DNA from: Chara braunii
Taxonomy: Eukaryota; Plantae; Charophyceae
Length of the DNA: 63,903 nt
Assembly: GCA_003427395.1 (NCBI GenBank)
Contig: BFEA01000023.1
Span: 2,272,790 to 2,336,692 of the forward strand
Direction of reading: 5' to 3'
The translations under genes were made by a program, and so were the position numbers. Position 1 is the stretch's first letter; each line of letters opens with the position of its first letter. Shown piece after piece: positions 13,420 through 51,487 of this stretch. The notes under the pieces are model-generated. The model saw nothing but the letters and a program-made list of their open reading frames with translations. It was not told the origin of the DNA and did no database searches.

Positions 13420-13503
<84 letters not shown>

Positions 13504-13506
<3 letters not shown>

Positions 13507-13590
13507 GTCGGTGAAAGTCCAACGAAACAGTCTGTTCGGTACAGTCATGCTTGTTTTGAGTGTATAGCGAATATGACAACACACGCACAC
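13504..13590 (+). mobile_element. 5'-truncated hammerhead-family repeat (CA-associated subfamily)
   Basis: (CA)n-gagtcggtgaaagtccaacgaaacagtctg...acacacgcacac. Confidence 0.65.
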
Positions 13591-13833
13591 ACGGAGCAAT
13601 GCGATCCGATTACTTTACCGAAGATATGCTTTTTTAAGGATTATATATGCTAGCACTTGAAGATTTCCTATAAAAAGTTTTATTTCTCTCAAGGACAATG
13701 CTCACAAAAACATACAAATTTCAATCAAATGCCATCTTTTGTTTGTTTGGAAGACGTGATGAAAGCAAGAGTAGAAAGAAAAATTCATCTTTATACTTAC
13801 TTCTTTATGGTTAAAAATTGTAAAAGATAGAAG

Positions 13834-14106
13834 CTATACATCCAAAAGCATTTTAAAGTTTCTTGTTTGAAATAATAAAAACACCATAAAAATGGTGCTG
13901 GCAGTACCAATCAACAGAAAGATTTTACAAAAATAAGTCAAAATTATATACTCTATATCATATATGATGATTAAATTATTATAAAACCGATTAGCAGTGG
14001 TGAAAGGATTATTGATCAGCAATAGACATGTCATCAAAACACTCAGTAAACCCAACCATCCCTCATTACGCACTAATGGTGGATAATCATATCTGTGTGA
14101 AGTGAT
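13834..14106 (-). pseudogene. nad2: NUMT: mitochondrial nad2 5' fragment
   Basis: YDYPPLVRNEGWLGLLSV...FYNNLII...TYFCKIFLLIGTAST matches the plant mitochondrial Nad2 N-terminus; contains indels. Confidence 0.85.
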
Positions 14107-14404
14107 CAAAATCATGCCATAGATAAGGGGTTTGAATCGACACTCTGTTAGGACTGATAAGTTGGTGTGAGTAAAATCGAGGACTTTTTTCTCTCTCTCT
14201 CAAGGGTGGGTATCGCTCTCTCAAAATTGGGGATCGCTCTCTCGAAGTTGGGTATCGCTCTCTCAAACGGTGGGTAGCGCTCTCTCAAAGGTGGGTATGG
14301 GTGACGTGGCCAGTCCGTATCCATCATTCAATTCGTCTTGGGCGGACTGTCGGGGTTCAACCTCGTGACAAGTCGGTGACCACGTGACAAGTCGGGGTTC
14401 AACC

Positions 14405-14810
14405 TGGGCGAAACAGTCTGGCATAGTCGTGCTGTTTTTGTGGAGTGTGTATGTATGTCGAACATGCAAGCACACAGAGGGTCTGGCACAATCATGGTCC
14501 GCACACCGAGTAGTCACCGAGTATTCACCGAGTATTCACTGAGTCGGGGTGAAACCAGGACGAAACAGTCTGGCACAATCATGCCTTTTTTCTTGGGAGT
14601 TGAGTGCAGCGAACATGACAGCACACACTCAAGCAGCGTCTACACCTTCCCGTCGGGATCCATCGTCCGCACACCGAGTATTCACCGAGTATTCACTGAG
14701 TATTCCGACCGATCAGGTGACCGTACACGTCATTTCGTGAAAGATCATCGCCTGAACACGAAACACGCTGGCACAGTCGTGCTGTTTTTGTGGAGGGTGT
14801 AGAGCACCGT
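14405..14810 (+). repeat. Cluster of degenerate hammerhead-family 3' parts interleaved with accgagtattc repeats
   Basis: cgaaaca(gt/cg)ctggca-a motifs near 14409, 14560 and 14759. Confidence 0.55.
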
Positions 14811-14977
14811 CTTCTGCAATCACAACGACAGACGGAGAGAGTGATGATGATGATGGTAGTGCTCATGATGATGATCAATGCATGGGAAAACGACAACGTT
14901 CCAGAGGAGGAAGGAGAGGAAGATCACAATGAACGCTAGGGTAGGACTGCAACGTCGAAGAGAAGGAAGGAGAGAAA

Positions 14978-15014
<37 letters not shown>

Positions 15015-15159
15015 GGCAGAGTAAGAAGGGGAGGAAGATATCCGCATTCCCCAACACAACGACGACGAGTGGAGGCGGTATGATGATCATCGTGCAGCGT
15101 ATGACGGCAGCGTCGCACACCAGGGAGCTGCTGCTGCTGCTGCTGATGATGATGATGAC

Positions 15160-15201
<42 letters not shown>

Positions 15202-16661
15202 GTGGTGGATGGGCGGATCTCCCTGTCGTCCGTGTCCTCCCTTCTCTAGTCCTTGCCGTCCCCTCCTTCACCTCGTCATCCCTTTCGCCATTCTTCGCCT
15301 CCTGCTCTGCCCGACTTCCTCCACATCATCTCCCCCTTCCTCCTCCTCCTCCTTCTCCTCCTCACCTTCGTCCTCAATTCCGTAGACTCACAGTTTTGAA
15401 GACGTACGAACAGTGCGTAAGTAGGTAAGCAGGAGTTTGTGGGGATCTATCTGACGGCAATTCTGGCTAGTCAGATTCAGTCCCCCCCAAAAAAGCTCGT
15501 GTGAGTCAGTATGGCCTCCTCCTCCCATGGTGGGCGGCGATTGCCAAGTCGCGTACAGCATACTTTTTTTTCTGAGGAATCGCATCCAATGCAAGCTCGA
15601 AGGGAAAACCTCCTCCGCAGAAAACGTGTATACCTCTTTTCGGTCGAATTGTTTTGTTGACGTCAATGGAAAGTAAGTATACTGCCGCGAGTTCTTCTGT
15701 CCACATTGTTTGGAGCGCCGTTCTTGTTTATCTGCTCGACACAGGTAAGGGATACCCCTCCCCCCCCCCTGCCCCTTCNNNNNNNNNNNNNNNNNNNNNN
15801 NNNNNNNNNNNNNNNNNNNNNNNNNNNNNNNNNNNNNNNNNNNNNNNNNNNNNNNNNNNNNNNNNNNNNNNNNNNNNNNNNNNNNNNNNNNNNNNNNNNN
15901 NNNNNNNNNNNNNNNNNNNNNNNNNNNNNNNNNNNNNNNNNNNNNNNNNNNNNNNNNNNNNNNNNNNNNNNNNNNNNNNNNNNNNNNNNNNNNNNNNNNN
16001 NNNNNNNNNNNNNNNNNNNNNNNNNNNNNNNNNNNNNNNNNNNNNNNNNNNNNNNNNNNNNNNNNNNNNNNNNNNNNNNNNNNNNNNNNNNNNNNNNNNN
16101 NNNNNNNNNNNNNNNNNNNNNNNNNNNNNNNNNNNNNNNNNNNNNNNNNNNNNNNNNNNNNNNNNNNNNNNNNNNNNNNNNNNNNNNNNNNNNNNNNNNN
16201 NNNNNNNNNNNNNNNNNNNNNNNNNNNNNNNNNNNNNNNNNNNNNNNNNNNNNNNNNNNNNNNNNNNNNNNNNNNNNNNNNNNNNNNNNNNNNNNNNNNN
16301 NNNNNNNNNNNNNNNNNNNNNNNNNNNNNNNNNNNNNNNNNNNNNNNNNNNNNNNNNNNNNNNNNNNNNNNNNNNNNNNNNNNNNNNNNNNNNNNNNNNN
16401 NNNNNNNNNNNNNNNNNNNNNNNNNNNNNNNNNNNNNNNNNNNNNNNNNNNNNNNNNNNNNNNNNNNNNNNNNNNNNNNNNNNNNNNNNNNNNNNNNNNN
16501 NNNNNNNNNNNNNNNNNNNNNNNNNNNNNNNNNNNNNNNNNNNNNNNNNNNNNNNNNNNNNNNNNNNNNNNNNNNNNNNNNNNNNNNNNNNNNNNNNNNN
16601 NNNNNNNNNNNNNNNNNNNNNNNNNNNNNNNNNNNNNNNNNNNNNNNNNNNNNNNNNNNNN

Positions 16662-16662
16662 N

Positions 16663-16716
<54 letters not shown>

Positions 16717-17182
16717 GTAGTGGTCTAGAAAACAAAGCCTTTGTTGTGCAGATACAGATGACCATGCGAGGGTTCGAGATATCACAGTATTTTGTTGCAT
16801 AATAATAATTCTAGTATATCTAAACTCAACCATGGCTATCTCAGTGTACTAAATTTCCCGGGGCCCTTTTTCTAAGGTTTCCCTGTTTTTATTTTTATTT
16901 TTATTTTTTGAGTCTTATCGTTACCCTTCTCTTGCCCATTGTCCGAGCCTATCCCCCTAACCCGAACCGCATGAGAAGGGTAACGATGAGACTCAAAAAA
17001 TAAAAATAAAAACAGGGAAACCTTAAGAAAAGGGCCCCGGGAAATTTAATACACTGAGAAAGCCATGCTTGAGTCTAGATATACTAGAATTATTATGCAA
17101 CAAAGTACTGTAATATCTCTAACCCTCGCATGGTCATCTCTATCTGCACAACAAAGCCTTTGTTATCTAGACCACTACCATC

Positions 17183-17255
<73 letters not shown>
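16662..17255. repeat. Long inverted repeat (foldback): ~225-bp arms plus (GA)n/(TC)n extensions and a ~33-nt loop
   Basis: 16711-16935 is the reverse complement of 16969-17184 with scattered mismatches. Confidence 0.92.
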
Positions 17256-17949
17256 CCAGGATGATCCTGAAGTGTTGGTGCTCCAGAGCCCTCATCCTTC
17301 TCCTTTCTAAAAAAGTCACGTGTTGCAAAATTTACTGCCTGTACACGGCCATACATACATCGCCCGCGGGGCCCCCAGCGCGACTTTCATTTCAGAGGCC
17401 GGAAATGCGACAAAGGCCATTGATGAAAGGTATCAACGGCGGCCCGGCCCCGAAAGTTGCAGTGGTGGGGGCGAGTTCATTTTCTGCAAGGCTGGGGCCG
17501 TGTCTACTGGCGGTTTAAGTCTTGAGAAACAGCGACCATGCCAGTCAGCAATCCCCGCGAGCAGCAGTACCTTATCCATTATTATCGTGACCAGAGACAC
17601 TGCGGGTGTTCATCTCCACTTTTTTCATTCGTTGACTGATGTGGCTTTGACTTTTGCGAGGAATGCTGTGCTGGCGTATGCTGGTGAGATAGGTGCCGAA
17701 GGTAAGAAAGGACGAAAAGGGGAAATAAATTCAATAAGAGGATAAGGCAGGTTCTGTGTCTGATGCAGTATGCTGTGAAGCTTGGAGGGTTGGGAAGTGG
17801 ATGCTGCAGAAAGGGCAGCGTGAGAGATGGCATAGTTAAGGGGAGCTGCCAGTGGGGAAATGTGGAGGGCGTCAGCTGGGCAATTTGGGGAGTGATTGAG
17901 AGGTAAAACGTGAGCTGGACGAATGGAGGGGTAATGGTGGTGAGAGAAC

Positions 17950-18875
17950 TGATGGACAGATGGATGGGTGGATGGATGGATGGATGGATGGATGGATTGA
18001 TGGATGGATGGGATGGGATGGGATGGGATGGGATGGATGGATGGGATGGGATGGATAGTCGGATTTGAATGAATAGAGAGATGGAGATGGATAGATGGAT
18101 GGGTGTGATAGATGGGATGGATGTGATAGATGAGATGGATGGATCGATGGGGTGAATCAGATCAGATGGATGGGATGGATGAATGTAATTGATGGTTGGA
18201 TGGATGGATGGATGGGATGGGATGGATAGTCGGATTTGAATGAATCGAGAGATGGAGATGGATAGACAAATGGATGGACAGACAAATGGATGGTTGATGG
18301 ATACCTGCGATAGATGGGATGGATGGATTGATGGATTGATGGATGGTTCGATGGGGTGAATGGGATGGATGGGATGGATGAATGTAATTGATATTTGGAT
18401 GGATGGACGGCTTGATCAATGGGATGGACGGCTTGATCAATGGGATGGACGGCTTGATCGATGGGATGGACGGCTTGATCGATGGGATGGACGGCTTGAT
18501 CGATGGGATGGGATGGATGGGATGGATGGGATGGATGACGGTAATTGATAGTTGGATGGATGGATGGATGGATGGAGGGAGGGAGGGAGGGATGGAGGGA
18601 TGGATAGACGGATGGGATGGGTAGTTGGATCTGGGAGGATGTGATGGAATGAATGGATGGTTCAATGGGAGGAATGGGATGGGATGGACGGATGGACCTA
18701 GGGGATGAATGGGATGGATGGATATCATCCTCATGCGGACAAGACAGTGAGTGAACTGGGGAATGATTCAGAGGTAAAACGTAGTTTGGGAAAATGGGGA
18801 GGGAATGCTGTGGGGAATTGATGAACGGATTTGGATGGATGGGTGAATGGATGGATGAATGAATGGATGGATGAT
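17950..18875 (+). repeat. (GGAT)n/(GGGAT)n low-complexity tract containing a 21-bp minisatellite (gatgggatggacggcttgatc, ~5 copies)
   Basis: Direct inspection. Confidence 0.9.
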
Positions 18876-18881
18876 GTGCAG

Positions 18882-18950
18882 TACCATCCGGATGTGAACA
18901 AGGCAGCTGGAGCAGAAGATAAGTTCAAGGAGATAAGCAATGCCTATGAG
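18882..18950 (+). CDS. dnaJ: DnaJ exon 2 (HPD motif)
   Basis: cag|[23 protein letters not shown]|gtatgt. Confidence 0.95.
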
Positions 18951-19877
18951 GTATGTCGTTGTGCACTGTACCTTGTGAGAGAGATTCATTGCGCTTGGTG
19001 GACGATGAAGTGTATCATTGGGTAGTAAAAGAAATTAAACAGAGTCGCCATGGTTGGGGTATTTCGTTTTGCGGACCTACTGTATGGTTCCGTTTTCTTA
19101 CTATTGATATGGCAGAATTTGTTTTGGTAACCTTGTCTGCGCCCCGGCTGGTTTGGTCGGTCTATTTTGGGATGCGTAGTGGTGCTTTCATGTGGGACTA
19201 GTCATCCGGGTTCTTTTTTATTTTTGCATCCGGGTTGGTTGATTCCCGTTGTTCGGCCTGTGTGTTTGGGGGCGGTGCTTTTATGTGGGAATCGTCATCT
19301 GGGATTGTCTTTTATGTTTGTTGCGGTGGCCGCAATAGATTCAATTCTTTTTGGCAGATAAGGTGTTTTTTGCCATCCTGGCTGGTTGCTTCCCGTTGAT
19401 CGGCCTATAGTGCGGGGGCGGTGCTTATATGTGGGAATCGTCAACCGGGATTGTTTTTTTTATGCGTATCTGTTGGTGGTGTCGAAGGCTTTATCATGTT
19501 TTGAATCCTGGCTGGTTTGTCCCGTCGATTTGGCCTGTGGCGTGGGGGCGGTGTTTGCATGTGGGACTTGTCATCTAGGATTCGTTTGCCCCCTGTTCTG
19601 TAATGTTTGGCTGTTCCCTTCCTCTTTTCATTGTCTCTTCGCCTTTTGGCTGTGTGCAAGTGGGTCGATATGACACAGGGGGTGGGGGCGGCCGTCACTC
19701 AACCTACATCCACGTGGGCGGCCTTGTACGCAAGAGGTTCTGAACAGGGGGAGTTGTAAGGAAGAAGATTTTAAAAAATCGAATTTATTTTTCTTTGTTT
19801 TCTTTCTGTTTCCCTTTCGCTTTTGCGCTCTGACAACTTTGTGACAATATATATACATATAGATATGTATATATCTA

Positions 19878-20225
19878 GATGAAACAGTTTTTGACGTCTT
19901 CCTTTTGCCTCGTTTGTTGTCCTCTTCTCCGTCTCTGCCTACGGTTCACCGTGCCGTTCTCTATGACGATATATATTCTTGTCCTTTGCTACCTTTCTAT
20001 CTACCTTTCACCAGGCAGTTCTCTGTGATTATTCATATATATATACCTCCTGATGAGTCGGTGAAACTCCGACGAAACAGTTTGTCACAGCCCCTCGGTT
20101 GTTGTCCTCTTCTCCCTCTCTGCCTACGGTTTACCATAGGGCAGCTGTGTTTGACGATATAGATATGTTTCCTGTTCTTTTCTTCCTTTCTGTCTACGGT
20201 ACACGGGGAAGTCTCCTATGAGGAC
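19878..20225 (+). mobile_element. Tandem cluster of hammerhead-family repeats (TA-associated subfamily); core-bearing copy at 20046-20165
   Basis: (TA)n-cctcCTGATGAgtcggtgaaactccgacGAAAcagtttgtcacagcccctc...gtttgacgatata, flanked by partial copies. Confidence 0.8.
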
Positions 20226-20261
20226 AACCGGAGTAAAAGAGGGCAACTAGAATACAAGTAT

Positions 20262-20403
20262 GGGGGTGTTTGGGCCGTGCTCCACTACTCACCACATGCA
20301 CAAAAGGCAAAAAATGCGGCGGTGCATCTTTCCACTTTCTAGCGGAAGGTTCATTCTCATTTTGCACAATTGGTAAGTAGTGGAGCGAGCCTAAGCGAGG
20401 CCC
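20262..20403. mobile_element. Tourist/PIF-Harbinger-like MITE
   Basis: Imperfect TIRs gggggtgtttgggccgtgctccactactcacca / tggtaagtagtggagcgagcctaagcgaggccc. Confidence 0.55.
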
Positions 20404-21174
20404 TTTGTTTGAAGATACAGACGTGTACGCAGAGTCAGAAGCTTAGACGTTTTGGAATGAAGGAGAACGGAATGCCGATGAAGGAAGAAGTAACCAAAAA
20501 AATGAAATAAAAATATAAAAGGCATGTGGTTATCGAATTGTACATGCGTGCATCTGCCAGCTAGTGAGTCAGGAGTTCAAGCCATTTTGAATATAGGAAA
20601 GAAGGTATAGCTGAAGAGTTGATATCTTAAAGACAATTCATGTTCTTACCCTTTATTTCTCCCCCACCTATAAACTATTCCTGTATTTTAAGCCATCTCT
20701 GTATTTTGTCGTGTATGTGGTTTCTGTCCCCCAAGGTCTGTATTATGCACTCTCTCTCTCTCACTCTCTCTCTCTCTGTCTCTCTCTTTCTCTTTCCAAC
20801 CTGAGTATTATGGCTGCATCGCTTGGGTTTCGGTTAGAGCTATCAGGTGCGTGTAGTATCTGCAATGCATGGCTTCACACGAAGACTGAGTCGTTTTGGG
20901 GTATGGCTTCCATACACGAGGGTGTGAAAACCATTTACCGTCCTACCACCCTGTATGTGAAAATCATTTACCATCCTACCCCAGCATGTGAAAGTCATAT
21001 GCCAACCTACCCCTGTACTTCCTGCCTGCTTGCAATCAGCTCCGTTGCTGTGTAGACCTGTGTTTGCATGGAGAGTCTGCATATGACACCCGCATGTGGT
21101 AACGATTACTGATTTATTATTATACGTGTTAATTAGTGAAAGTATTAGCGTTTGTGGTTGTGGTTGTGACACAG

Positions 21175-21270
21175 GTGCTATCTGATGACGACAAGAGACC
21201 GGTGTACGATCAATATGGCGAAGCGGGTGTCAAAGGCTTTCCGGGTGGGGCCTCTAGTGGAACGGAATAC
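21175..21270 (+). CDS. dnaJ: DnaJ exon 3 (end of J-domain)
   Basis: cag|VLSDDDKRPVYDQYGEAGVKGFPGGASSGTEY|gtaagt. Confidence 0.93.
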
Positions 21271-21343
21271 GTAAGTTTAGCAATGCCTATCTCTTTAGCC
21301 CTATCTTTGCAATTTCCGTTTTTTTGTTTTTTCCCTCTTTTTT

Positions 21344-21599
21344 GAAAAGGGCGAAGACCTTGAGATATCCTCGCTGAACTAACCGGCCCTAGGTATTTCA
21401 GAAGTATTTTATTCTGTTAATCTTCATTGCATCTCGTTTCGGACTTGGGGCTGTATTCCAACAGTTCATGGGTGTACCAACTGAGCTACCGTCGTCACCC
21501 GAATATAACACCCGGTCATTATAGCTGTATTTGGCACAACTGTCAGCCCAGATATGGAGATAATTACCGGGTGTTCTATTCGGGGGAAGACGGTAGGCC
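21344..21599 (-). mobile_element. tRNA-derived SINE, interrupted by a hairpin MITE
   Basis: Minus strand ggcc[MITE]TAGCTCAGTTGGTA (A box), degenerate B box, A-rich tail; homologous copies at 46841, 48396 and 51749. Confidence 0.75.
21489..21593. mobile_element. 105-bp hairpin MITE (Tc1/mariner/pogo-like, TA TSD)
   Basis: TA-CCGTC...GACGG-TA with ~40-bp TIRs. Confidence 0.85.
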
Positions 21600-22332
21600 T
21601 GTTGCTCTGTCCTCGTTACGACGAAAGACCAGGCAACTCACCACTAACGGTATTGATTTTATTTGCGGCCTGCGGAATGCAGGTGCAGCCTATTTTCTGC
21701 TAACTGGAGGTGCAGTCTGTTATTGTCAGCAGATTTTACGTGCAGCCTGTCGTTGTCCGTAGGATGCAGATGTAACCTGTTGTTGTCTGCGGACTTTACG
21801 TGAAGACGGTTGTCTTCAGACTGCAGATGCAGCTTGTCTGCAAACTGCAGAGGCAGCATGTTGTCTGCCCACTGCAGGCTGCAGTCTATATTTTGAGCCA
21901 CCAGGTTGCAGACTGAAGGGGCTTTTCAGATCACTCACTCTGGTCAAGACTCGCCAAGTCACCACAACATGCAGACTATAGATACAGCCTGCATGTCATA
22001 GTCTAAGCCTGCAGCCTTCAATCTGTCGCCTGCAACCTGCAGCCTGGCACCTGTTGTCTGCAGCTTGCAGTGTGCAGCTGGAGCCTGAAGGTGGAGCTAA
22101 CAGACTGTGGGGTGACAAAGGTTTGATTCAGTCTTCTCGAGACCTGCAAAATCATGTCACACGCTGGTCATCTTGACCGATCCAGCCTGCCCGTGTGGCT
22201 GAATGGTACACACATGTAACTGGTCATCAAAAGATCGTGAGTTTTGGATCGCGATGAAAAGAATGTCAGGATCCTCTCTCCTTCACCAAAACAAGTAGAG
22301 CTCACTGCAGCTCTGCCCAGGGCAGAGAGCAG

Positions 22333-22424
<92 letters not shown>

Positions 22425-23449
22425 NNNNNNNNNNNNNNNNNNNNNNNNNNNNNNNNNNNNNNNNNNNNNNNNNNNNNNNNNNNNNNNNNNNNNNNNNNNN
22501 NNNNNNNNNNNNNNNNNNNNNNNNNNNNNNNNNNNNNNNNNNNNNNNNNNNNNNNNNNNNNNNNNNNNNNNNNNNNNNNNNNNNNNNNNNNNNNNNNNNN
22601 NNNNNNNNNNNNNNNNNNNNNNNNNNNNNNNNNNNNNNNNNNNNNNNNNNNNNNNNNNNNNNNNNNNNNNNNNNNNNNNNNNNNNNNNNNNNNNNNNNNN
22701 NNNNNNNNNNNNNNNNNNNNNNNNNNNNNNNNNNNNNNNNNNNNNNNNNNNNNNNNNNNNNNNNNNNNNNNNNNNNNNNNNNNNNNNNNNNNNNNNNNNN
22801 NNNNNNNNNNNNNNNNNNNNNNNNNNNNNNNNNNNNNNNNNNNNNNNNNNNNNNNNNNNNNNNNNNNNNNNNNNNNNNNNNNNNNNNNNNNNNNNNNNNN
22901 NNNNNNNNNNNNNNNNNNNNNNNNNNNNNNNNNNNNNNNNNNNNNNNNNNNNNNNNNNNNNNNNNNNNNNNNNNNNNNNGGGAAGAGTGTGATCGTGAAA
23001 TTTGGAGAGAGTGAGAGTGAGTTTTGGAGCAAGCAGGAGAGTATGTTATTGCCGGGGTTTGTGAGCCTCTGTGAGCTCCAACTGTCTCTGTTGGTTTCAC
23101 CGAGGCCCGACCAAGACTGAAATTGTGTATCTAGTGATTGTTACAGGATGACACAATACTGGGAGGGTTCTCTATTAGGTTCACTTTTTGTTCTTTGTTC
23201 ATTGTGAAATGAAGCAAGTTAATTTGGAATGACGAGTCGCAGGGGGGCCATACGCCTTCTTCATTGGTGGACAATTTTTACTGACGTCAACAATCCAGCT
23301 TGCTTGTCACTGGGGGAAGGGAGAGCAGGAACGAGGAAAGATGGAAGGGAGGAGAAGTAAGTAGGATTATGTATCGATGGGAGGGAATGAGATTGTTTGG
23401 CTTGAGGAGTGAAAGTTGTTTGTTTGTTTGTTTGTTTGCAATGTGGCAG

Positions 23450-23565
23450 ACAAATCCATTTGATCTGTTTGAATCATTTTTTGGAAGTGGTTTTGGGGGC
23501 ATGAGCGGTATGGGAGGAGCGAATGGCCGAAGGCGGCAAGGCCCAGCAGCAGGAGAGGACATAAG
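23450..23565 (+). CDS. dnaJ: DnaJ exon 4 (G/F-rich region)
   Basis: cag|TNPFDLFESFFGSGFGGMSGMGG...GEDI(R)|gtaaaa, phase 2. Confidence 0.93.
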
Positions 23566-24646
23566 GTAAAAAAAATAATCACGATGTAATTGTTAACACG
23601 TTCGAAAAATGACCTCCCCTCAGTCGCCTATGAAGTGTGGTGACCCAGAAAGCAAAGCAGGTGATTGTTATGTAGTACGTAGCAATCACTAAGTTCGTGA
23701 TAGAATATCACTTCAAGATAGAATCACTTTTCGTGTAGCATTTACGAAAGTATCACCTTCAGCGTTACGCTGGCATAATACTTGTCTAATCCTGGGGGTT
23801 TATTTGCAATTTGCCATCAAGACCCCAGGTCTACTGCCCACATGCAATAGCATCAGCCTTCGCCCCTTGAGATTCCTCGTCTCCCTCAGTTGGCGCCTCA
23901 CACGTAAATCTTAGCTATGGCTGACTCTTCTCTCATGAAAGGATCTTCCCTCCATCGTCTTTGACCGTCATACCGATACCAATATACTCGTCTCCTCGCC
24001 AAACGTCCCAGAGGTCCTACCCGAAAAGAATGTAAGTCTTCTTGACTGAAGAATGCCACTCCCTTGTAGTCTTGGAGTCTTCTTCTTCTTATTTGAATAT
24101 GGTTGCCAGGTACCAGTAGGTAAGCTGGTTGTGTCCTCACGCCTCTTCTATCTCGCACAGGTAGGTCTCTCACTGGCAGTCCTCCTCTCTATCCCCCCTG
24201 AGTCCCACCCATAGGTATTGCTGCCTGCTACGATGGTTGCCCGCCCAAGCACTCTCTCCACTCTCTGTTGGCAGCAGGGCAGTATGGCGCACAAGTGCAA
24301 TGACGAACTGAGCGCAAGGCTCTTCTATCTCTCACAGGTAGGTCTCCCAGTTCTCCTCCCTATCCCCCCTGAGTCCCACCCATAGGTACTGGCCCCAAGC
24401 GGCTGGCTGTGCAGCTGCTCCACCCAGCAGGCCTTGAACTCATCTGGAAACTTGGTCTGAACCATCAGATGTGTGTGTGATCTGTGGCCAAAAATGAAGC
24501 TGTGTTGAGAATTCCTTGACTCTTCGTCTCCAGGTGGCCATGATTTCACTTAGGCCTGGGGTACCCAAGTCCCGGCCTGGCTTGCCCAGTTGGCGTACTG
24601 GTTTGGAGTCTGACTGGACTCGGAACATTTCTCCGAACCTTCCCTA

Positions 24647-24760
24647 CCTTCTTTCCCCGAATACAAAGTACACTTAGTACGGTCATTATAGCTGTATTTG
24701 AGGCATCTTTCAGTCTAGATACGGCTATAATGACCGTACGTTGTATTCGGTGGAAGAAGG
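24647..24760. mobile_element. Hairpin MITE copy (TA TSD)
   Basis: ta-ccttctttccccgaatac...gtattcggtggaagaagg-ta. Confidence 0.8.
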
Positions 24761-25074
24761 TAGGCCTCTATGGACTCTAATGACCCTACGTTCTAGAGAC
24801 TAACTTGAGGTGTGATGAATGCAAGTTTATCTAAGTCTGTTTTCCCCCCCTTACACCCCCCTTACCCCCCCCCCCCCTCTTGGACATGATGGAATTTGAG
24901 AACAGGATTTGAATTTGGAAATTGTGAACTTGATTTTTTCAAGAGATGCACAGCAATGGTTGGTTGGCTGTGTGTAGGACTCACTCTTCCATCATCATCT
25001 GCGTTTTGTTTGTTGCGGTTATTTATATCTTGTTTCAATCATGTATGCTCTTGCTTTCGGTTGTTTCCTTCCAG

Positions 25075-25270
25075 ATTTGACTTGGCGCTGGAATTTAAAG
25101 AAGCCATATTTGGAGTTGAAAAAGAGTTTGATGCTATGCATCTGGAGACCTGTGGCGTTTGCAAAGGATCCGGCTCAAAGCCGGGTACCAGCAGAAAGAC
25201 ATGTAAGATGTGTGGTGGGATGGGTCAAGTCATGAGGACGCAGCAGACGCCATTTGGGTCGTTCTCGCAG
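25075..25270 (+). CDS. dnaJ: DnaJ exon 5 (zinc-finger repeats 1-2)
   Basis: [13 protein letters not shown]...CGVCKGSG...CKMCGGMG...TPFGSFSQ; AG/GT boundaries and phases match neighbouring exons. Confidence 0.95.
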
Positions 25271-25789
25271 GTGCAGAAACTATTTTTCTTCCTGTGCTGT
25301 TGTGCTCGTCCGTTTCTGTCTGTCTGTCTGTTTATTTGCTTGTTTGCGTGCTTGCTTTGGCTTGCTTGTTTGCATGGTACGAGCGCTGCTCACTCTGCAT
25401 GGCATTTCTTTGACAGAATTTTGCCTGATTTTTTCAGGCGGGCCACATACACATGCTGCCGGAAGTCGCAGTGTGAGCGTGAGCACTGGTTTTCACGTCT
25501 TCCTTTGTGGATGGCGTTCACGATAGCAGTAAGTTTTGCAATGTTTGGCATGTCCGCAATCTCTGTTTCATCATTCGTCGGACTGCCTACTTTTACTGCA
25601 GTAGACTTAAGGGGATGCTCAGACTAGGACCGGCCGTTTTCAAGTACCTCTCTTTTTTGTCGAAGTGCAGTAAAAATGCAATCCTTGAAGGCCGTTGTGT
25701 GAGTATTTTGGGCAATAGCGTGGGTGAGCCATGAACTGTGAGACCTTGGTTCTGTGCTAATGTGCTTGAGTGTCAAGTATGTAGGATTT

Positions 25790-26740
25790 GGAACACTTGG
25801 CACTGCAGTTTTTCGCACGGTTGGGACTGTGGTATTTCCTAGTAAGCTTGGCGGTGCAGTGTTTGGGACATCTTGCAATGCTTGGCACTTTGGGACACTT
25901 CGCAATACATGGCACTGGAGTATTTTGCTGCAATACTTGGCACTGCATGATTTGCCAGAAATCTTGGTGCAGCAGTTTTTGGGACACTTGGCAATGCTTG
26001 TTGGCACTGCAGTATTTGCCATAAATTTTGGCGCGACAGATTTTGGGACACTCGGCAATAGTTGGCACTGCAGTGTTTTGGGACACTTGCGATACTTGGC
26101 ACTGCAGTATTTGCCAGAAACCCTGGCACTCTTCTTGGCACTGTAGTATTTGCCAGAAGTCTTGGCACTGCAGTTTTTCCGGCATACTTGGCACTGCAGT
26201 TTTTTTGGCATACTTGGCACTGCAGTTTTTTTGGCACACTTGGCTCCACAGGTTTTGCAAGAAACCTTGACACTGCTCTTGGCACTGCAGTATTTAGCAC
26301 CGTTCTTGGCACTGCAGCATTTGCAAGAAATCTTGGCAGTGCAGTTTTTGGCACACTTGGCAGTGCAGTTTTTGACACGCTTGGCTCTGCTATTGGCACT
26401 GCAATATTAGGCACACTTGGCACTGCAATATTTTTTTGCCAGAAATCTTGGCACACTGCAGTTTTTTTTGGCACACTTGGCACTGCAGTTTTCAACACAC
26501 TTGGCTCTGCAGTTTTCGCCAGAAATCTGGGCTCTGCAGTGTTTGGGCCACTTAGCGCTGCAGTATTGCTGGGACACCTGGCGCTGAAGTTTCTGGCACA
26601 CTTGGTACTGCAGTATTTGGCTCACTTGGCGCCACACTATTTTTCCCATGATCCTTGGCATTGCATTTTTGACTGTACTGCAGTTTTTGGCAGGCTTGGC
26701 ACTGTAGTACTTGAGAGTCGAGACACTTGGTACTCCAGTG
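25790..26740. repeat. Minisatellite built on a (cac)ttggcactgcagt core
   Basis: Dozens of degenerate copies, alternating with ttgccagaaatc spacers. Confidence 0.9.
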
Positions 26741-26983
26741 TTTGCTAGAAATTTTTGATGTTGCAACCGCCAGATGAGATGGTGAAGGTTGAACCAACGT
26801 TTCCACCGAAGATAGCATACATTATTCCGAACACAAAGAACCGAGAAGTGAAGAAGCACTGCGAAATAGACATTAAATACTTGAAGAAGGAAGTGTCAAT
26901 AGTCATGGACTATGTTTCAGACACTAGAACCAGAAAAACTAGAACCAGACTGCCTCTTGCACAAACAAAGGCAAGACTTGTTG

Positions 26984-39174: not shown

Positions 39175-39635
39175 CAGTGTTGCATACCCCGACGGTCGGC
39201 GCCCTTGACTGGTCGGCTGCCGACCAGCCGACCGGTCAGCTGATCGGCACCTACCATCTACCGGTCGGGGGTCGTCGACACCCCGCAAACCCCCAATAAC
39301 CCTGCCAACACCGCCATACCCGCCCCCAATACCCCCGTACAATACCCCAACACCCCCAAACCGCCCCCCAACATCCTCATACCCCCCCTCAATACCCCCT
39401 ACACCACCCCTATATCCCCCTATACCCCCCTATACCCCGCCCCCACACCCCAAACCGCCACATACCCCCCCTCATCCCCAAAAGTTTCTCAGCGGATATG
39501 GGCTGTACTGACTGGTCGGCCCTACTGGTCTCCCCAACTCAGATTGAAAAAAAATCAGTGGATGGCTGTTTTCTGACTGGTCGGCCCTACTGGTCGGCTG
39601 CAAAACGGTCGGCTGTCGGCAGGTATGCAACCCTG
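39175..39635. mobile_element. hAT-type non-autonomous element
   Basis: TIRs cagtgttgcatacc / ggtatgcaaccctg; 8-bp TSD aagtggag/aaggggag; ggtcggc subterminal repeats. Confidence 0.82.
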
Positions 39636-40141
39636 AAGGGGAGGGAAAAAACAAAGAGTGGAGGAGGTAGGAGGCGGACAACTGTACTAGGAGGAGGACA
39701 CAAACAGGATGAGAAGAGGAGAGGAGGACACCGGGAGGTAAGTGCAGCCCGATAAACTTTGTGTGAAGCCTGTGAGGGCCTCAATGCCACACATCGTTTT
39801 GGGGCCCGCAGGCATCCTAGTGTCCATGCCAGTGAACCCCAATTGTTTCGGGTGGGTGCAATGCGGCTGTGTGAAAGTGAGCAAAGCGTGCGCCAGCAAG
39901 TATGCTTAACCATCTTGGTCTTCATGGCACACACCACTTCTGTTCTCGGGGGATGGAAATGAAGAACTTATAATGGCTGTGCCCTCAGTCTTCTTTGTCA
40001 ACTGCACTTCTAGTCTTCGAGAGTTCTGCAGAATAATTTCTACCAACATTTGCTTCCTGAGTTGCTCATGCGCACATATTTTTTTTGCTTGTTAATGCTT
40101 TGCAGCTCTTGTGGTCTGTGCACTGCTCTCTGCTTACTGTT

Positions 40142-40197
<56 letters not shown>

Positions 40198-40887
40198 NNN
40201 NNNNNNNNNNNNNNNNNNNNNNNNNNNNNNNNNNNNNNNNNNNNNNNNNNNNNNNNNNNNNNNNNNNNNNNNNNNNNNNNNNNNNNNNNNNNNNNNNNNN
40301 NNNNNNNNNNNNNNNNNNNNNNNNNNNNNNNNNNNNNCCCCCCCTGGTGTCTCTCTCTGTGTCTCTGTGTGTCTCTCTCTGTGTCTGTCTCTCTGTCTTC
40401 ATGTAGTCTTGATGGTCTTCTTGTGCGGGCCGCCTGGAGATCTGGATGATGGACGAAACCTTGTCGATTTTGCTTGTGCACCTAAAATGCAAGGTGCAGC
40501 CACTCCATGGAATCTGTGCATGTGCCCCTTCTGTTGGAAGGTGGAACTGCTTTTTTCTCTCAGGGAGAGCTCTGACCGTGAGTCTAAGCGATGTTTGATC
40601 TGCTTGAACGTACTCAAGGTAAACTTGACAGCCTGGTAATGCGTTGAGTGAGCCTGTGTTAGTAGTATGTCGCAGCTTGCTTTCTAGAAGGGGGAGGGAG
40701 GGGGGTGTCTGTCATTGTGTACTCCTCGATGCGAAGGGTATTTTACTCTGTTTCCATAGGTATATATTACCTGACGGTCCCAGAGGCTGCAGGAAAGCCC
40801 ATCCGGCTGGAAATGCCATTCGATGCGCTTTGCCAAAAAACTTCCTGAGGCAGGAGGGGAGGACGTCTGGCTGGGAACGAGATGTGC

Positions 40888-40988
40888 TGTCCTTCGGGGC
40901 GTCCGTTAAAATTGGAACGATACAGGGAAAGAAGATGAGCATGGGCCCTGCACAAGCATGGTATGCATAGATCAAGAAACATTCCAAA
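40888..40988 (+). pseudogene. U6: Degenerate U6 snRNA copy
   Basis: tgtccttcggggcgtccgttaaaattggaacgatacag...gaagatgagcatgggccctgcacaag. Confidence 0.85.
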
Positions 40989-41309
40989 AGATCGTGTAGT
41001 ATTTGTTCTGGTCAGTTCAATATGTGATCCATGGTCCATTGGGTACAAAAAAGAAAAATAAAACAGAAATAGAAAAAGAAAGGAGATGTGTGTCATCTGG
41101 CAAGATACTAAATGGTGAGCTAGGCTTCCGGTGCCGCCCTGCCTGGCCGGCACTGCCGTGGACCTGTGCTGCCTTTTTTTTAATGTTTGTTTTCTTCTCT
41201 CTTTTTTTTGGTGCTGGGCCTCTGCTGCGCCTGCAGATATCTTCACGAAGCTTCCATGTTTGCACTTGTTGGCCACACTAGTATTTCGCGAGTGGCAAGG
41301 GGGGGGGGG

Positions 41310-41880
41310 GGGGGTTGGGTGGGGTCTCTCTGACTCCAAGTGTTGGGGACGGGAGTGGGAGGTGGCAGGAGTGACGTCCGATATGGCGGAAGGGAGGTTG
41401 GAGATGACGGAAGGGAGGTGGGAGGTGGGAGGTGGCGAGAGTAAGGTGAGAGATGACGGAAGGGAGGTAAGAGGTGGCGGGAAAAGAGGTGGGAGGTGGT
41501 GGGATGGATGTTAAAGATGGCGGGAGTGAGGTTGGGGATGGTGGAAGGGAGGTGGGAGATGGCGGAAGGGAGGTTGGGGATGTCGGGAGAGAGGGAGGGT
41601 TGGGTGGGGTCTCTCTGACTCCAAGTGTTGGGGGCGGGAGTGGGAGGTGGCAGGAGTGACGTCCGATATGGCGGAAGGGAGGTTGGAGATGACGGAAGGG
41701 AGGTGGAGGTGGGAGGTGGCGAGAGTAAGGTGAGAGATGACGGAAGGGAGGTAAGAGGTGGCGGGAAAAGAGGTGGGAGGTGGTGGGATGGACGTTAAAG
41801 ATGGCGGGAGTGAGGTTGGGGATGGTGGAAGGGAGGTGGGAGATGGCGGAAGGGAGGTGGGGGATGTCGGGAGGGAGGTT
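41310..41880. repeat. ~290-bp purine-rich tandem duplication
   Basis: gggttgggtggggtctctctgactccaagtg... repeated near 41312 and 41597. Confidence 0.85.
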
Positions 41881-42753
41881 GCCCCGGTGTCCCTGAAATT
41901 GGCCCCCCAAGACATGCGCGCTGAGGCCACACGGGGCCTGACCGGGGGACCCACACGGCCGTGCGCCCATGCGGGGCATCCATGCGTGTCGCGGGGGCCT
42001 GTGGGGATGGAAATGAAGCCTAGGTAGTGAGAGAGTAGATGTCTGTCATCTGGCAAGAAACTTAGTGAGCGAGTACTTCTTCAGCTTCCCAATGATTGGA
42101 TGATAGTGCAGATTGCACTTCTCTCTCACTGGTGGCAGCGCTGCAGGCAATTCATTAGGGCCAGGCCGCACGGTTCGCGTAACTCGTGCTTAGAAAGCAC
42201 GAACCTGCCCACTAAAACGCCCAGATTCATGCTAGCATAGCATGAACACAGCACAGGTGCCCTTAGTCTGGTTTCCGGTTGGATCTCTGTGTAATCTCGA
42301 GCAAAGACATAATAAGATGAAAGAATCTGGTTCTGGTTGGCATGCTTAATATCAATCTGGAAGTGCAAGAGGGTGGCTGCCACACCCAAATGCACACATC
42401 AAGCCAAGACTTCTACTGCCAAATTGCTGAATATATCAGTGTCCGGAACTGTGTTACAGCCCACTGTGATCATCGCGAACCTTCATCGTTTGAAAGTTGC
42501 GATACGTCCGCTCCTAACAATCGCCACATCGTGATGCTAGCACGATGCTAGCATACACCAAAATTGTTTGAGCTGCGAGGTGATGGCTCCTTGTTATCAG
42601 TATGCCGCACAACAGCATATTGCTAGCGTTCATTCTGAGCCAGAATCAAACTCTGTTTTTTTTTAATTTTATTATGGCCTAATTTCTGGAATGTAGGATT
42701 TGAAACGACAACAATGAGTTTACCAGTTCCAGTCAATCCAATCTTAGTTAGCG

Positions 42754-42848
42754 ACCCGAATAGAACGCCCGGTCATTATAGATGTATTTGGTGGAACTTT
42801 TAAGTCTAGATGCAGTGATAATGACCGGGCGTTCTATTCAGGTGAAGA
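42754..42848. mobile_element. Hairpin MITE copy (ends eroded)
   Basis: acccgaatagaacgcccggtcattat / ataatgaccgggcgttctattcaggt. Confidence 0.8.
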
Positions 42849-42964
42849 GTCTGAAGACCATAGTTGAACTACCAATTGAACAGAACAAGGTGGGAATGGA
42901 AGTTTTTTTTTTGGTTGTTTTGTTGTTTCTTTTCCAATGTTAAAGTTTTGCCCTCATGCCAAAC

Positions 42965-43052
42965 ATACCTTTCTCGGCCTTTTGGCTCCGATCAAGTGTA
43001 GTCTCTGTTCTAAACAGTTCAATATCTGATCCGTAGTCCATCAGGCCACATT
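42965..43052 (+). pseudogene. U2: U2 snRNA 5' fragment (3'-truncated, mutated)
   Basis: ATACCTTTCTCGGCCTTTTGGCT..GATCAAGTGTAGT.TCTGTTCT...CAGTT.AATATCTGAT is the plant U2 5' end; the GTAGTA branch-pairing box is mutated. Confidence 0.9.
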
Positions 43053-43326
43053 TTTCAAAGATCAGTGGCAGTTTTTGTCCAATTTGAAGGAACAGCAGTG
43101 CAAGGAATGTACTGTTCTTTCATTTTCTGCTGTTTGTTGTGTGGGCTGTCACACAGAGAGTAATGCAATTGGTAGAGGGAATAAAGGTCATAGCATAGCA
43201 ACAAGTCAGCAACCGTAGGCTCATGCATGGATGTCGTCCTGGGCGGATTGTCGAATCTGTGAAGTCCATCAGTTGATTGTGATGGAATGATTCTTTGAGT
43301 TTCAGTGTCGAAGAAGAAGAAGAAGC

Positions 43327-43449
43327 ATATATATACGTCAAACAGAGCTGCCCGGTAAACCGTAGGCAGAGAGGGAGAAGAGGACAACGAACGAGGGGCT
43401 GTGACAAACTGTTTCGTCGGAGTTTCACCAACTCATCAGGAAGGCTGAA
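43327..43449 (-). mobile_element. Hammerhead-family repeat, 5'-truncated, inverted relative to the 43517 copy
   Basis: Reverse complement ttcagccttcCTGATGAgttggtgaaactccgacGAAAcagtttgtcacagcccctcg...gtttgacgtatatata. Confidence 0.85.
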
Positions 43450-43516
43450 GCATATATTATCCACAGCCGGGGTTAAGGTGGATTATCACTTACGGTGTAA
43501 TCAGTTAGGGGATTCT

Positions 43517-43576
43517 GCAGACTGTTGAGGGTTCAGCCTCCTGATGAGTCGGTGAAACTCCGACGAAACAGTTTGC
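43517..43576 (+). ncRNA. Type III hammerhead ribozyme
   Basis: Stem III gcagactgt/acagtttgc (9 bp); GUU cleavage triplet; stem I gagg/cctc; CUGAUGA; stem II gtcgg/ccgac; GAAA. Confidence 0.88.
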
Positions 43577-44400
43577 CACAGCCCCTCGTTTGTTTTCCTC
43601 TTCTCCCTCTCTGCCTACGGTTTACCGGGCAGCTCTGTTTGACTATTATATATATATATATGGTGTTCCTGACACTCACTGATTTGATGGATTTCCAAAT
43701 TTCTGCGATTCTCGCCGATTCATGGTTTTCTTTGAGCAGCAGCTAATTGTATGATTCTTAGAGTTTGCAGTTGTTGCAACTTCTCCAGTCTTTTCGGCGA
43801 AGAAAGAGAGGGAAAACACTGCAAAACAGTGCGATGGTACGCCGCGGAGTCCGCACCCAGTTATTCAATGCATGGATGTGCACTGAGTAATAGAATAAGA
43901 AGTATGCTCAGTCGATGGTGTCCGTTCAAGGCATCGAGATGGCATCCATTGAAGACTCGATGCCATGTTTTCAACATTGGTAATGTACTAGTTCGGGGTG
44001 GAAAAAAAAAAAGAAGGGGGAAAAAAAGTAAGGCGCTGACTTTCTGACTGACCACTGCGCACTCACTTCAAGATTTGAATACTTGGATTGGATATGCTTC
44101 CACATCTTCTCCTGCACGACTGCATTTCGATTTGCTTCTACATCCTCTCGTGGAGGACTGAATGGCTGATGAGCTGATGCTATATCTCTTGAACCTCACA
44201 TTTGTCTGGAAAAGAATAAGAATAAGTAAATTGAAACCTGGGTGAGGGTTTTCCCACCACCCGCTCCTTTTTGCGCATTTTATCTGTGAATCTCTTCCCG
44301 TGGCTGTGAAGTTCTTCCCGTGGCCTTGGTGCAAGTACTGAGAAGGGAAGCGGGTGATTGATTCATTTGACTAAGGACACACTCACACTAGGACTCGGTG

Positions 44401-48463: not shown

Positions 48464-48994
48464 AGTCGGTACAAATCAAACTTTCCTCCTATCGCTGGTG
48501 ATATACCAAAGCCGCTTAGGGTCTCTTTGTGTTGTGGAGCGCACAGCTCTGAGGAGCTGCATGTGCCTTGTTGTTTGGCATTTCCCTTCTTTTTTGTCAG
48601 TTTGTGAGTTTCTTTGTCAAGAGACTGATCTCGCCTCGCCTCGCCTTGTTAGAAGTGGAATAACGCCATCGACATGAGAGGTTTTTCAGTTGCCCTGAGG
48701 TCGGTGGAAAGTTTGGAATTGGGAAAAAAGCAGAGTAAAAGGAACTCTGATGTGATTTGAGGGCCTGACAGAGTTGAGATGCAGTAGCTTCAGAAATGTG
48801 GTCAACCATCAATGAAGATATGAAAGCACTAGTACCTTTGTCGGTTCGGGAAATAGTGGCCCTCCGACTTCAGGAGGCGGAAACGAAACGACGGCCGCCG
48901 ATCAGATTTATCAACGGCAGTCGTTGTCGGGCCCGGCCTCCTTAAAGTTCGGTACTAGGCTAAAACTTGTCAAAACCGGATGGCAAAGGTACTA

Positions 48995-49099
48995 CCGTCT
49001 TCACCCGAATAGAACTCCCGGTCATTGTTGCTGCATCTGGACTGAAAGTTGGGCAAAATGCAGCTATATTGACCGGGCGTTCTATTCGGGTGAAGACAG
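48995..49099. mobile_element. 105-bp hairpin MITE (TA TSD)
   Basis: ta-ccgtcttcacccgaatagaac...gttctattcgggtgaagacag-ta. Confidence 0.85.
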
Positions 49100-50344
49100 T
49101 AGTGGTTTAACGCATTGGAACCTCTGCGGAAGGATGCATTATTACATCCGCTTCGCAGATGCTTTTTTTTTTTTCTAGTAGCAATCTCTGGTGCACGATC
49201 AGAAGCAGTGAAACTGAGATCTGAATTGGAATTGTTCCTTAGGGACAAACTGCAATCAACACTGTTGAGGTCACCATCAATTGAGCTTGCTCATCGCAAC
49301 ATGGCACCTTTTTGTAGGAAAGGAAACTGAGTTGAGGTACGTAGAGATTTGAACACGCGACCATCGACCTGTAGTCTGGTGTTTGCTGAAGGCATCATGG
49401 TCCCTTACTTCCTTAGCGCGGTATAGGGTGGTGATGTGTGGTACCCAAAGCTTCAAAGTTTCAAAGTTCAAAGTTCAAACCCAACACAAGACCGTCGTAT
49501 GTTAGGCTAGCGAGTCCGTAGTTCATCCGCATGGAGCCAGAATGCCCCTTTGCATGCGCACCAGTACATTGAAGCAGGTCCCTGTTTGAAGGCCCGAAGA
49601 CCCTATTTTGCCAAATCAGACTGTTCTGGTGTGGCATACTCAGATCCACATGGGCCCGCAACGCCCGACAGTAGGGTTAGGGGTTTCGTAGGGTTTAGGG
49701 CCTGTGTCACCCGTAGGACCCAGTAGGCCACCCTCTCGTTTTTGCCATCTTCCCACTTTTGGCATCGACCAGACCTTATGCAAAACCAGGTTACCACTTT
49801 TGGCTTCTACCAGACCTTATGCAAATTGGCACCGGACTTTTCATTTTTTCGTCTGGTTCCTACTTTCTGCGAATGGGTGCCAGAATTTTTGTATTTTCGC
49901 CTGGCCCCTACTTTTTGGCATTTTCGTTTTTGGCGCCAGAACGGACTTCTGTTCTTGGCGCCAGAACAGTTTTTCTTTCGACCAGACTGTTTCCTTTCAA
50001 CCTAGGACACTAGGCCCAGCGTATATATGTAGCTGGGTCGACCTCATTTGTAGGCAGGTAGTTCTCGAGGTAGTTCTTCAGGCAGTTCACTGAGGTAGTG
50101 CTAGGCGCTTCTCAGTGGTAGCTCTGAGGTAGTAGCGAGTAGTCTTCAGTAGTTGACGCGCTGGGCGCAGTTAGAGTAGTCTACAGCGCTGGGCACGAGC
50201 TAGGAGTCGGAGCACTGCGTGAGAGAGACGGGCCGAGGCCAGGAGGACTTACCTGCGACGCCATAACTCCAGCTTCGTCTTCAGGACATCCACACCTGCA
50301 TCAAGGCGGCACCTTTCTGCAGGTTAGTACCTGACATAGATGCA

Positions 50345-51373: not shown

Positions 51374-51487
51374 CCGTCTCCACCGTCTCCACCGGAATAG
51401 AATGCCCTGTCATTATAGCTCTATTTGGGGCAATTTTGAGTTCATATGCAGTGATAATGACTGGGTGTTGTATTCCAGTGAAGACGG
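51374..51487. mobile_element. Hairpin MITE (TA TSD)
   Basis: ta-ccgtctccacc...tattccagtgaagacgg-ta. Confidence 0.8.

What the first reader, a model, noticed from the sequence alone, without database searches (positions are those of the whole stretch)
13504..43660. Family of short hammerhead-headed repeats embedded in microsatellites (retrozyme- or Penelope-like system)
Seen: related copies at 13504(+), 14409-14800(+, partial), 19878-20225(+, tandem), 37225-37280(-), 43327-43449(-) and 43527-43660(+). All except the complete copy begin a short distance 3' of the predicted cleavage site (…cctcCTGATGA or later) and abut a microsatellite or AT-rich repeat. Two subfamilies share the ribozyme head but differ in body. 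One (cagcccctcg...gcctacggtttacc...gtttgac) ends in and sits in (TA)n; the other (gcacagtc...tttt...acacac) ends in and sits in (CA)n. Inference: non-coding RNAs whose 5' end is made by self-cleavage are reverse-transcribed by a helper RT, primed by pairing of their repeat tail with the matching genomic microsatellite. I do not recognise this as a described family.
Basis: partly seen in the sequence, partly recalled or inferred. Interest (0 to 1): 0.85.

Follow-up and report, generated by a model that had tools for sequence, protein, structure and literature searches.

The report
Ribozyme-carrying mini-retroelement in stonewort microsatellites
These repeats are cut-short copies of an abundant, roughly 420-base, non-coding jumping RNA of the alga Chara braunii that lands in simple repeats and carries a viroid-type self-cutting ribozyme which, in the one full-length copy found, is switched off by its own antisense arm.

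Summary
The repeats are real. The window is Chara braunii (by protein match). 43517-43576 is a complete type III hammerhead; eight partial heads lie nearby, two with 11-bp target duplications. Tail and target microsatellite match: (TA)n with (TA)n, (CA)n with (CA)n. No copy spans a gap. The family has about 10^4-10^5 copies and is in poly(A) RNA. New here: another C. braunii locus holds a full 423-nt ORF-less unit, preceded by an identical 84-nt repeat of its own 3' end (pseudo-LTR layout). Its upstream part is an antisense arm, kept by G-U substitutions (14:1), predicted to lock the ribozyme. Best reading: a non-autonomous, retrozyme-like element moved by target-primed reverse transcription, probably by a Chlamys Penelope-like RT; the helper is not shown. 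It fits neither described retrozyme class (type III goes with LTRs, type I with non-LTR). This scan noted the family before on other pieces of this genome.

The parts
43517..43576 (+). Complete type III hammerhead: stem III 43517-25/43568-76, GUU triplet 43524-26 (cut before 43527), stem I 43527-30/43537-40, core 43541-47, stem II 43548-52/43560-64
   Evidence: Rfam RF00008 45.8 bits, E 7.8e-7; fold; GUU is the majority triplet in DNA contigs, GUC about 10%
43457..43660 (+). (TA)-type copy, 5'-truncated 70 nt upstream of the cut; body ends at 43643, then (TA)n
   Evidence: depth and loose ends at 43457 and 43641/43643; 43471-43650 is 95% identical to the L242 unit
43327..43449 (-). (TA)-type copy starting 6 nt after the cut, head-to-head with the 43457 copy; 11-bp target duplication at 43322-43332 and 43447-43457
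   Evidence: differs from its neighbour at 4 body positions plus an indel, so probably a separate template
20046..20225 (+). (TA)-type copy starting 11 nt after the cut, inserted in the TA tail of the copy before it; carries a second, diverged 3' body
19878..20045 (+). Older (TA)-type copy starting 35 nt after the cut, with duplicated 3' body; a tiny 3'-end-only piece lies at 19842
37225..37280 (-). Short (CA)-type copy starting 11 nt after the cut, inside a (CA)n tract
13504..13596 (+). (CA)-type copy starting about 20 nt after the cut at the edge of (CA)41; 11-bp target duplication at 13497-13507 and 13586-13596
14342..14805 (+). Decayed tandem array of three (CA)-type units; the first keeps the 5' strand and GUC triplet (starts upstream of the cut) but has a mutated core

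Best explanation
A family group of non-autonomous, ORF-less retroelements of Chara braunii (full (TA)-type unit about 423 nt) that carry a type III hammerhead about 120 nt from their 3' end. SHOWN: structure of the copies, 5' truncation, fixed 3' end (TGAC-purine-A then (TA)n or (CA)n), 11-bp target duplications, tail-matched microsatellite targets, a partial-tandem (pseudo-LTR) full-length copy, transcription, sense excess downstream of the cut. PREDICTED by folding: the 5' half of the full unit is an antisense arm that pairs with the ribozyme in a 97-bp rod and blocks it (40 kcal/mol); truncation that removes about 200 nt frees it. INFERRED: a helper RT/endonuclease, most likely a Chlamys-type Penelope-like element (two hammerhead-bearing lineages are described in this species), nicks a (TA)n or (CA)n tract, the nicked end pairs with the repeat at the element's end and primes cDNA. 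The ribozyme cuts tandem or read-through transcripts where it is unlocked; templates that begin at the cut give copies starting 5-20 nt after it (trimmed to a microhomology), while locked unit-length RNA (linear from a tandem, or circularised cut-to-cut) gives longer copies and pseudo-LTR repeats. My odds for sub-steps: unlocked ribozyme cuts in vitro 0.85; helper is a Penelope-like element 0.65; the cut shapes the 5' ends of short copies 0.45; circular intermediate 0.4.
For: Type III head. 11-bp duplications at two copies. 5 of 6 insertion blocks start within 10 nt of a TA/CA run against 5.7% background; loose read ends agree. L242: 423-nt unit without ORF or tRNA, preceded by an 84/84 identical copy of its 3' end and by a 20-nt inverted 3' end of a sister family, the layout described for Penelope-like elements (PMC8557442). 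Rod: -195 kcal/mol, z -8.8 on the sense strand against -118, z -3.4 antisense; 14 wobble-keeping changes against 1 opposite, p 0.0005. The apex-side arm letters recur in 317 RNA reads at 43471. Read ends from many loci peak at 43532 and 43537; joints from 43643 back to 43528/32/33/35 exist in DNA. Sense:antisense RNA is about 1:1 at 43511-34 and 3.5-4:1 in the body in two runs. C. braunii has hammerhead-bearing Chlamys; Chlamys target microsatellites and have non-autonomous forms.
Against: No sequence link to any RT-coding element was obtained. Hammerheads described in Penelope-like elements are type I; the type in Chlamys-2_cBra could not be read (supplement not held). U6 retrocopies in the same window have 11-14 bp duplications too, so TSD length does not pick the helper. 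Only one full-length unit was seen; at least two other upstream variants exist (loose ends at 43457 and 43508) and were not folded. No sharp RNA start at the cut. 4 of 13 head-bearing copies start upstream of the cut. Library strand is taken from convention, not a control. No cleavage or circle was tested.
Confidence: 0.6

Rival explanations
1. The copies are ordinary 5'-truncated 3' ends of hammerhead-bearing Chlamys elements (autonomous Chlamys-2_cBra or PLE-X1_cBra, or their deletion derivatives); the ribozyme is a passenger of the pseudo-LTR and does not set copy length.
For: Ribozyme-less Chlamys make insertions of median 128 bp in microsatellites (PMC9977147), close to the 117-125 nt cut-to-end distance. 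Chlamys-2_cBra has a 3' hammerhead. Several upstream variants share one 3' module. Tiny 3'-end-only pieces show truncation at any length.
Against: The one full-length copy is 423 nt with no ORF and a complete pseudo-LTR. An antisense arm kept by G-U changes implies selection on ribozyme control. Sense RNA is depleted upstream of the cut relative to antisense.
Confidence: 0.2
2. A SINE-like RNA whose 5' end is made by the ribozyme and which is moved by an L1/Tx1 or RTE LINE protein rather than a Penelope-like one.
For: An L1-type LINE lies at about 54800-61100; U6 retrocopies with 11-14 bp duplications show such machinery at work; a third head-sharing family at L249 ends in poly(A).
Against: The U6 retrocopies end in A-runs, these in (TA)n/(CA)n; identical partial tandem and an inverted 5' piece at L242 are Penelope-like; no Pol III boxes or tRNA part.
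Confidence: 0.15
3. Solo LTRs or fragments of a plant-type LTR retrozyme moved by a Ty3-gypsy element.
For: Type III head and self-blocked fold are features of plant LTR retrozymes.
Against: 11-bp not 4-bp duplications; 5' truncation with a fixed repeat-tailed 3' end; no Met primer site or sense-strand polypurine tract at L242.
Confidence: 0.03
4. Pieces of a DNA transposon with terminal inverted repeats (the head-to-head pair being its TIRs).
For: 43327-43655 is a near-perfect inverted pair.
Against: Most copies are single or direct-tandem; the inverted copy has its own 11-bp duplication; ends are asymmetric (fixed 3', variable 5').
Confidence: 0.02

Closest known systems
Chlamys Penelope-like elements of C. 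braunii (Chlamys-2_cBra, PLE-X1_cBra) and non-autonomous Chlamys such as MRC1 and Chlamys-N4_cRei (PMC8557442, PMC9977147)
   Same: Same species for the hammerhead-bearing lineages; microsatellite targets; heavy 5' truncation to about 130 bp; partial-tandem pseudo-LTR and inverted 5' piece; hammerhead near the 3' end.
   Different: No RT link shown. Non-autonomous Chlamys with a hammerhead are not described in the papers found. Hammerhead type III here; type in Chlamys-2_cBra not readable. No antisense lock reported.
Metazoan non-LTR retrozymes (PMC7229834; bioRxiv 10.64898/2026.07.22.740005)
   Same: Non-coding 170-450 nt units with a hammerhead, very high copy number, large TSDs, proposed Penelope-like origin.
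   Different: Those have type I heads, occur as long tandem arrays and mostly leave the ribozyme unblocked; here type III, mostly dispersed truncated copies in microsatellites, ribozyme blocked by an arm.
Plant LTR retrozymes (PMC4918200) and hammerhead viroids
   Same: Type III head with the natural loop consensus; ribozyme blocked by a complementary sequence in a very stable fold; plant lineage; unit size near that of viroids.
   Different: No LTR pair around a primer site and polypurine tract, no 4-bp TSD; circular RNA not shown.

Membership tests
Hammerhead ribozyme type III (RF00008) | Core CUGAUGA..GAAA, NUH triplet, three stems with ends in stem III | tested here: met
   (45.8 bits, just under the 48.5 gathering score; E 1e-8 at L242)
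Hammerhead ribozyme type III (RF00008) | Self-cleavage | not testable with these tools
   only indirect: sense RNA depleted upstream of the cut; no sharp start site
Plant LTR retrozyme | Two 300-400 bp LTRs around a primer site and polypurine tract | tested here: not met
   L242 unit has neither on the sense strand
Plant LTR retrozyme | 4-bp target duplication | tested here: not met
   11 bp at two copies
Plant LTR retrozyme | Type III head blocked by complementary sequence | tested here: met
   predicted at L242; one copy only
Metazoan non-LTR retrozyme | Type I hammerhead | tested here: not met
   order of stems is type III
Metazoan non-LTR retrozyme | Tandem 170-450 nt non-coding units | tested here: inconclusive
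   423-nt unit in partial tandem, decayed array at 14342-14805, tandem joints in DNA; no full dimer seen
Retrozymes (either class) | Circular monomer RNA | not testable with these tools
   raw reads were oligo-dT; back-joints also stand in DNA
Non-autonomous Chlamys Penelope-like element | Pseudo-LTR (partial tandem) and inverted 5' piece | tested here: met
   L242, 84/84 identical repeat and 20-nt inverted 3' end; one locus
Non-autonomous Chlamys Penelope-like element | 5' truncation and microsatellite targets | tested here: met
Non-autonomous Chlamys Penelope-like element | 3' end shared with an autonomous GIY-YIG/RT element | tested here: inconclusive
   no such ORF found in the window or sampled loci; the profile used was from distant clades; published consensus not held
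tRNA-derived SINE | tRNA head with Pol III A and B boxes | tested here: not met
TIR DNA transposon / MITE | Symmetric fixed ends with terminal inverted repeats | tested here: not met
   fixed 3' end, scattered 5' ends

The most novel reading that the evidence does not exclude
A third class of retrozyme: a viroid-sized (423 nt) RNA with a self-locked type III hammerhead that circularises, is primed internally at its own short (UA)n or (CA)n run by a nicked genomic microsatellite, and is copied by a Penelope-like RT. The linear cut-to-cut form would give the short post-cut copies and the circle the pseudo-LTR copies. It would join the animal (Penelope-linked, type I) and land-plant (LTR, type III, viroid-like) kinds in a close relative of land plants.
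Probability: 0.3. Interest if true: 0.85.

Novelty: new variant of a known kind. Interest (0 to 1): 0.6.

Why it matters
Retrozymes are sorted as type III with LTRs (plants) or type I without (animals), and hammerhead viroids have been proposed to come from such genomic elements (PMC11722881). A type III, self-locked, viroid-sized element that inserts the non-LTR way in a charophyte breaks that split and gives a cheap test system: one short RNA for cleavage, locking and circularisation assays, and thousands of genomic copies to test whether a ribozyme sets retrotransposon length. It also bears on the open question of what hammerheads do in Penelope-like elements (PMC8557442 calls it unclear). 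For the host, truncation would turn locked ribozymes into free ones inside transcribed regions.

Tried and rejected
Exact 31-nt core in JGI metagenomes: no hit. Relaxed core in metagenomes and viral contigs: about 240 loci with unrelated hammerheads, none sharing the body or upstream part. Two of them were Penelope-like ORFs followed by type I heads (L045, L104); a homolog search from L104 listed no Chara protein among its best 120. A profile built from these found no RT in the window or in ten Chara loci (L249 was not scanned); it may be too distant to see Chlamys. The 'telomerase RBD' gene at L001 looks like host TERT, not a helper. Supplements with Chlamys consensus and hammerhead sequences are not held. 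A type I fold using the downstream GUC was considered and dropped: by inspection no stem I partner. Summed contig depth was not taken as copy number: overlapping unitigs can overcount up to about 31-fold. Rfam miRNA hits are hairpin or microsatellite artefacts. I left out folding the loose-end consensus letters of the other upstream variants because they have no reference id.
Full report
Source. The window's LINE ORF1 is 71% identical to Chara braunii CBR_g45715, and every paralog I looked up lies in assembly GCA_003427395.1. The window also holds plant-type U6 and U2 retrocopies and exons of a DnaJ gene with very long introns. I take it as C. braunii; an earlier scan note gave the same name first.

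Observation. All copies are present. The one at 43517-43576 is a complete type III hammerhead: Rfam RF00008, 45.8 bits, E 7.8e-7, three-way fold with z -2.7, GUU triplet at 43524-26, cut product starting at 43527. The core motif occurs 4 times against 0.01 by chance. Two bodies follow the shared head; both end in TGAC, a purine, A, then (TA)n or (CA)n. A third body, ending in poly(A), follows a decayed complete head at L249. No copy spans an assembly gap, so the gap question does not touch the finding; I did not test continuity with reads.

Insertion signature. Two copies have 11-bp target duplications that begin in the microsatellite and end in a 3-nt microhomology with the truncated 5' end (43322/43447 and 13497/13586). 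Five of six insertion blocks start within 10 nt of a TA or CA run, against 5.7% of the window. At 13504 and 37280 the long (CA)n lies on the 5' side, so it is target, not tail. The 14342-14805 array is the exception. Reads agree: 3' loose ends sit at 43641/43643 followed by (TA)n, 5' loose ends are scattered and preceded by TA- or CA-rich letters. A fixed 3' end, variable 5' ends and duplications of this size point to target-primed reverse transcription (established knowledge of non-LTR and Penelope-like elements), not to an LTR element or DNA transposon.

Abundance and expression. One DNA run laid 15,221 contigs on 350 nt; summed depth was about 2 million in the body and 5.8 in the unique flank. 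That sum overcounts by up to about 31-fold. Four head-bearing segments turned up in 287 kb of other loci and nine in this window. With a genome of about 1.4 Gb (my knowledge) this gives 10^4 to 10^5 copies. Two oligo-dT RNA runs hold 750 and 876 reads per million, and a run under a second species label holds both bodies.

Do copies start at the cut? Partly. The commonest multi-locus 5' loose ends in RNA reads are 43532 and 43537, 5 and 10 nt into the cut product, and DNA joints return from 43643 to 43528, 43532, 43533 and 43535. Sense and antisense reads are about equal at 43511-34 but 3.5-4 to 1 in the body, in both runs (strand by library convention). This fits cleavage, or selection against free ribozymes in transcripts. 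Against a strict rule: DNA depth 5-16 nt upstream of the cut is still 62% of the body and about 20% at 30-50 nt upstream; 4 of 13 head-bearing segments with known flanks start upstream (43457, 14342, L242 unit, L249); no sharp RNA start was found; and Chlamys elements without a ribozyme leave copies of median 128 bp (PMC9977147), about the 125 nt from cut to end. I put the claim at 0.45.

The full unit. L242 (BFEA01000027.1) holds a 423-nt unit with no ORF over about 70 codons and no tRNA part, ending in the same 3' module (95% to the window copy) and (TA)n, and preceded by an 84/84 identical copy of its own 3' end and a 20-nt inverted 3' end of a sister family. Partial tandem plus inverted 5' piece is the layout drawn for Penelope-like elements (PMC8557442). 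The sense strand folds at -195 kcal/mol (z -8.8), the antisense at -118 (z -3.4). The rod has 97 pairs, 20 of them G-U. Its 5' arm is a reverse complement of the ribozyme region with 14 changes that keep pairing by wobble and 1 of the opposite kind (p 0.0005). DNA decay would be strand-symmetric, so I infer selection on the sense RNA. The active fold costs 40 kcal/mol in the full unit, linear or circular, and 1.5 once the first 200 nt are gone (equilibrium prediction). The letters next to the rod's apex recur as a loose end in 317 reads of one run, and DNA depth falls at the same place, 43471, which suggests but does not prove that the arm is common. Other upstream variants exist (43457, 43508). 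In the window, the inverted neighbour would likewise lock the only complete head on a + strand transcript (50 kcal/mol).

Mechanism. Most likely a helper RT with endonuclease nicks a (TA)n or (CA)n tract and primes on the matching repeat at the element's end. The ribozyme cuts where no arm precedes it (pseudo-LTR, truncated copies in host transcripts) and is silent in the full unit, which keeps the template whole. Either a linear transcript from a partial tandem or a cut-to-cut circle primed at its internal (UA)n run would give the identical pseudo-LTR; I cannot separate these. The helper is inferred: C. braunii has two hammerhead-bearing Chlamys lineages, Chlamys target microsatellites and have non-autonomous forms. 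An L1-type helper remains possible, since U6 retrocopies here have 11-14 bp duplications, though with A tails. I found no RT linked to the module.

Comparison. It works like a non-autonomous Penelope-like element or non-LTR retrozyme, but fails membership of the metazoan class on ribozyme type, and of the plant LTR class on LTRs, primer site and TSD length, while sharing that class's type III, blocked ribozyme. Only the Chlamys paper mentions hammerheads in C. braunii; it does not describe short non-coding families in the text I could read, and its sequence files were not held, so overlap with its consensus set is not excluded.

Verdict. Real, abundant, apparently undescribed: a new variant of a known kind. 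Interest 0.6, held down by the missing helper link, one full-length example and no bench evidence; 0.85 if the circular, locked, Penelope-driven reading holds (probability 0.3).

Noticed in passing
window 29330-29430 (-), 33598-33698 (-), 40889-41060 (+), 42965-43139 (+): U6 retrocopies with A tails and 11-14 bp target duplications; a decayed U6 followed directly by U2-like sequence; a 5' U2 piece 190 nt from the hammerhead pair.
   Followed up: partly
window about 54800-61100 (+): L1/Tx1-type LINE with zinc-knuckle ORF1 and broken endonuclease/RT frames.
   Followed up: partly
window 10737-36582 (+): DnaJ gene of the chloroplast type spread over at least 26 kb; most copies lie in its introns. 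I did not establish whether 43517 is still inside the gene.
   Followed up: partly
window 43234-43253 (+): 18 of 20 match to 14333-14352, the 5' strand of the (CA)-type head ending at its cut site; borderline (E 0.04-0.07).
   Followed up: no
window 16845-17053; 21486-21596, 24680-24767, 27030-27390, 42754-42848, 48991-49103, 51382-51490: A long hairpin and a separate dispersed palindromic family of about 95-110 bp, MITE-like.
   Followed up: no
L249 6820-7020 (-): Third family with the same head (GUC, decayed core), extended stem III and a poly(A) end.
   Followed up: partly
L001 3148-9473 (-): Probable C. braunii telomerase RT gene fragment next to an L1 copy.
   Followed up: partly
L104 375-2576 and proteins P0035-P0154: A large metagenomic family of endonuclease-less Penelope-like RTs with a 3' type I hammerhead; not linked to this finding.
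   Followed up: no
window 43457 loose end: The consensus of one upstream variant contains 8 letters matching the Met-tRNA primer site; agreement only 0.7, probably chance.
   Followed up: no
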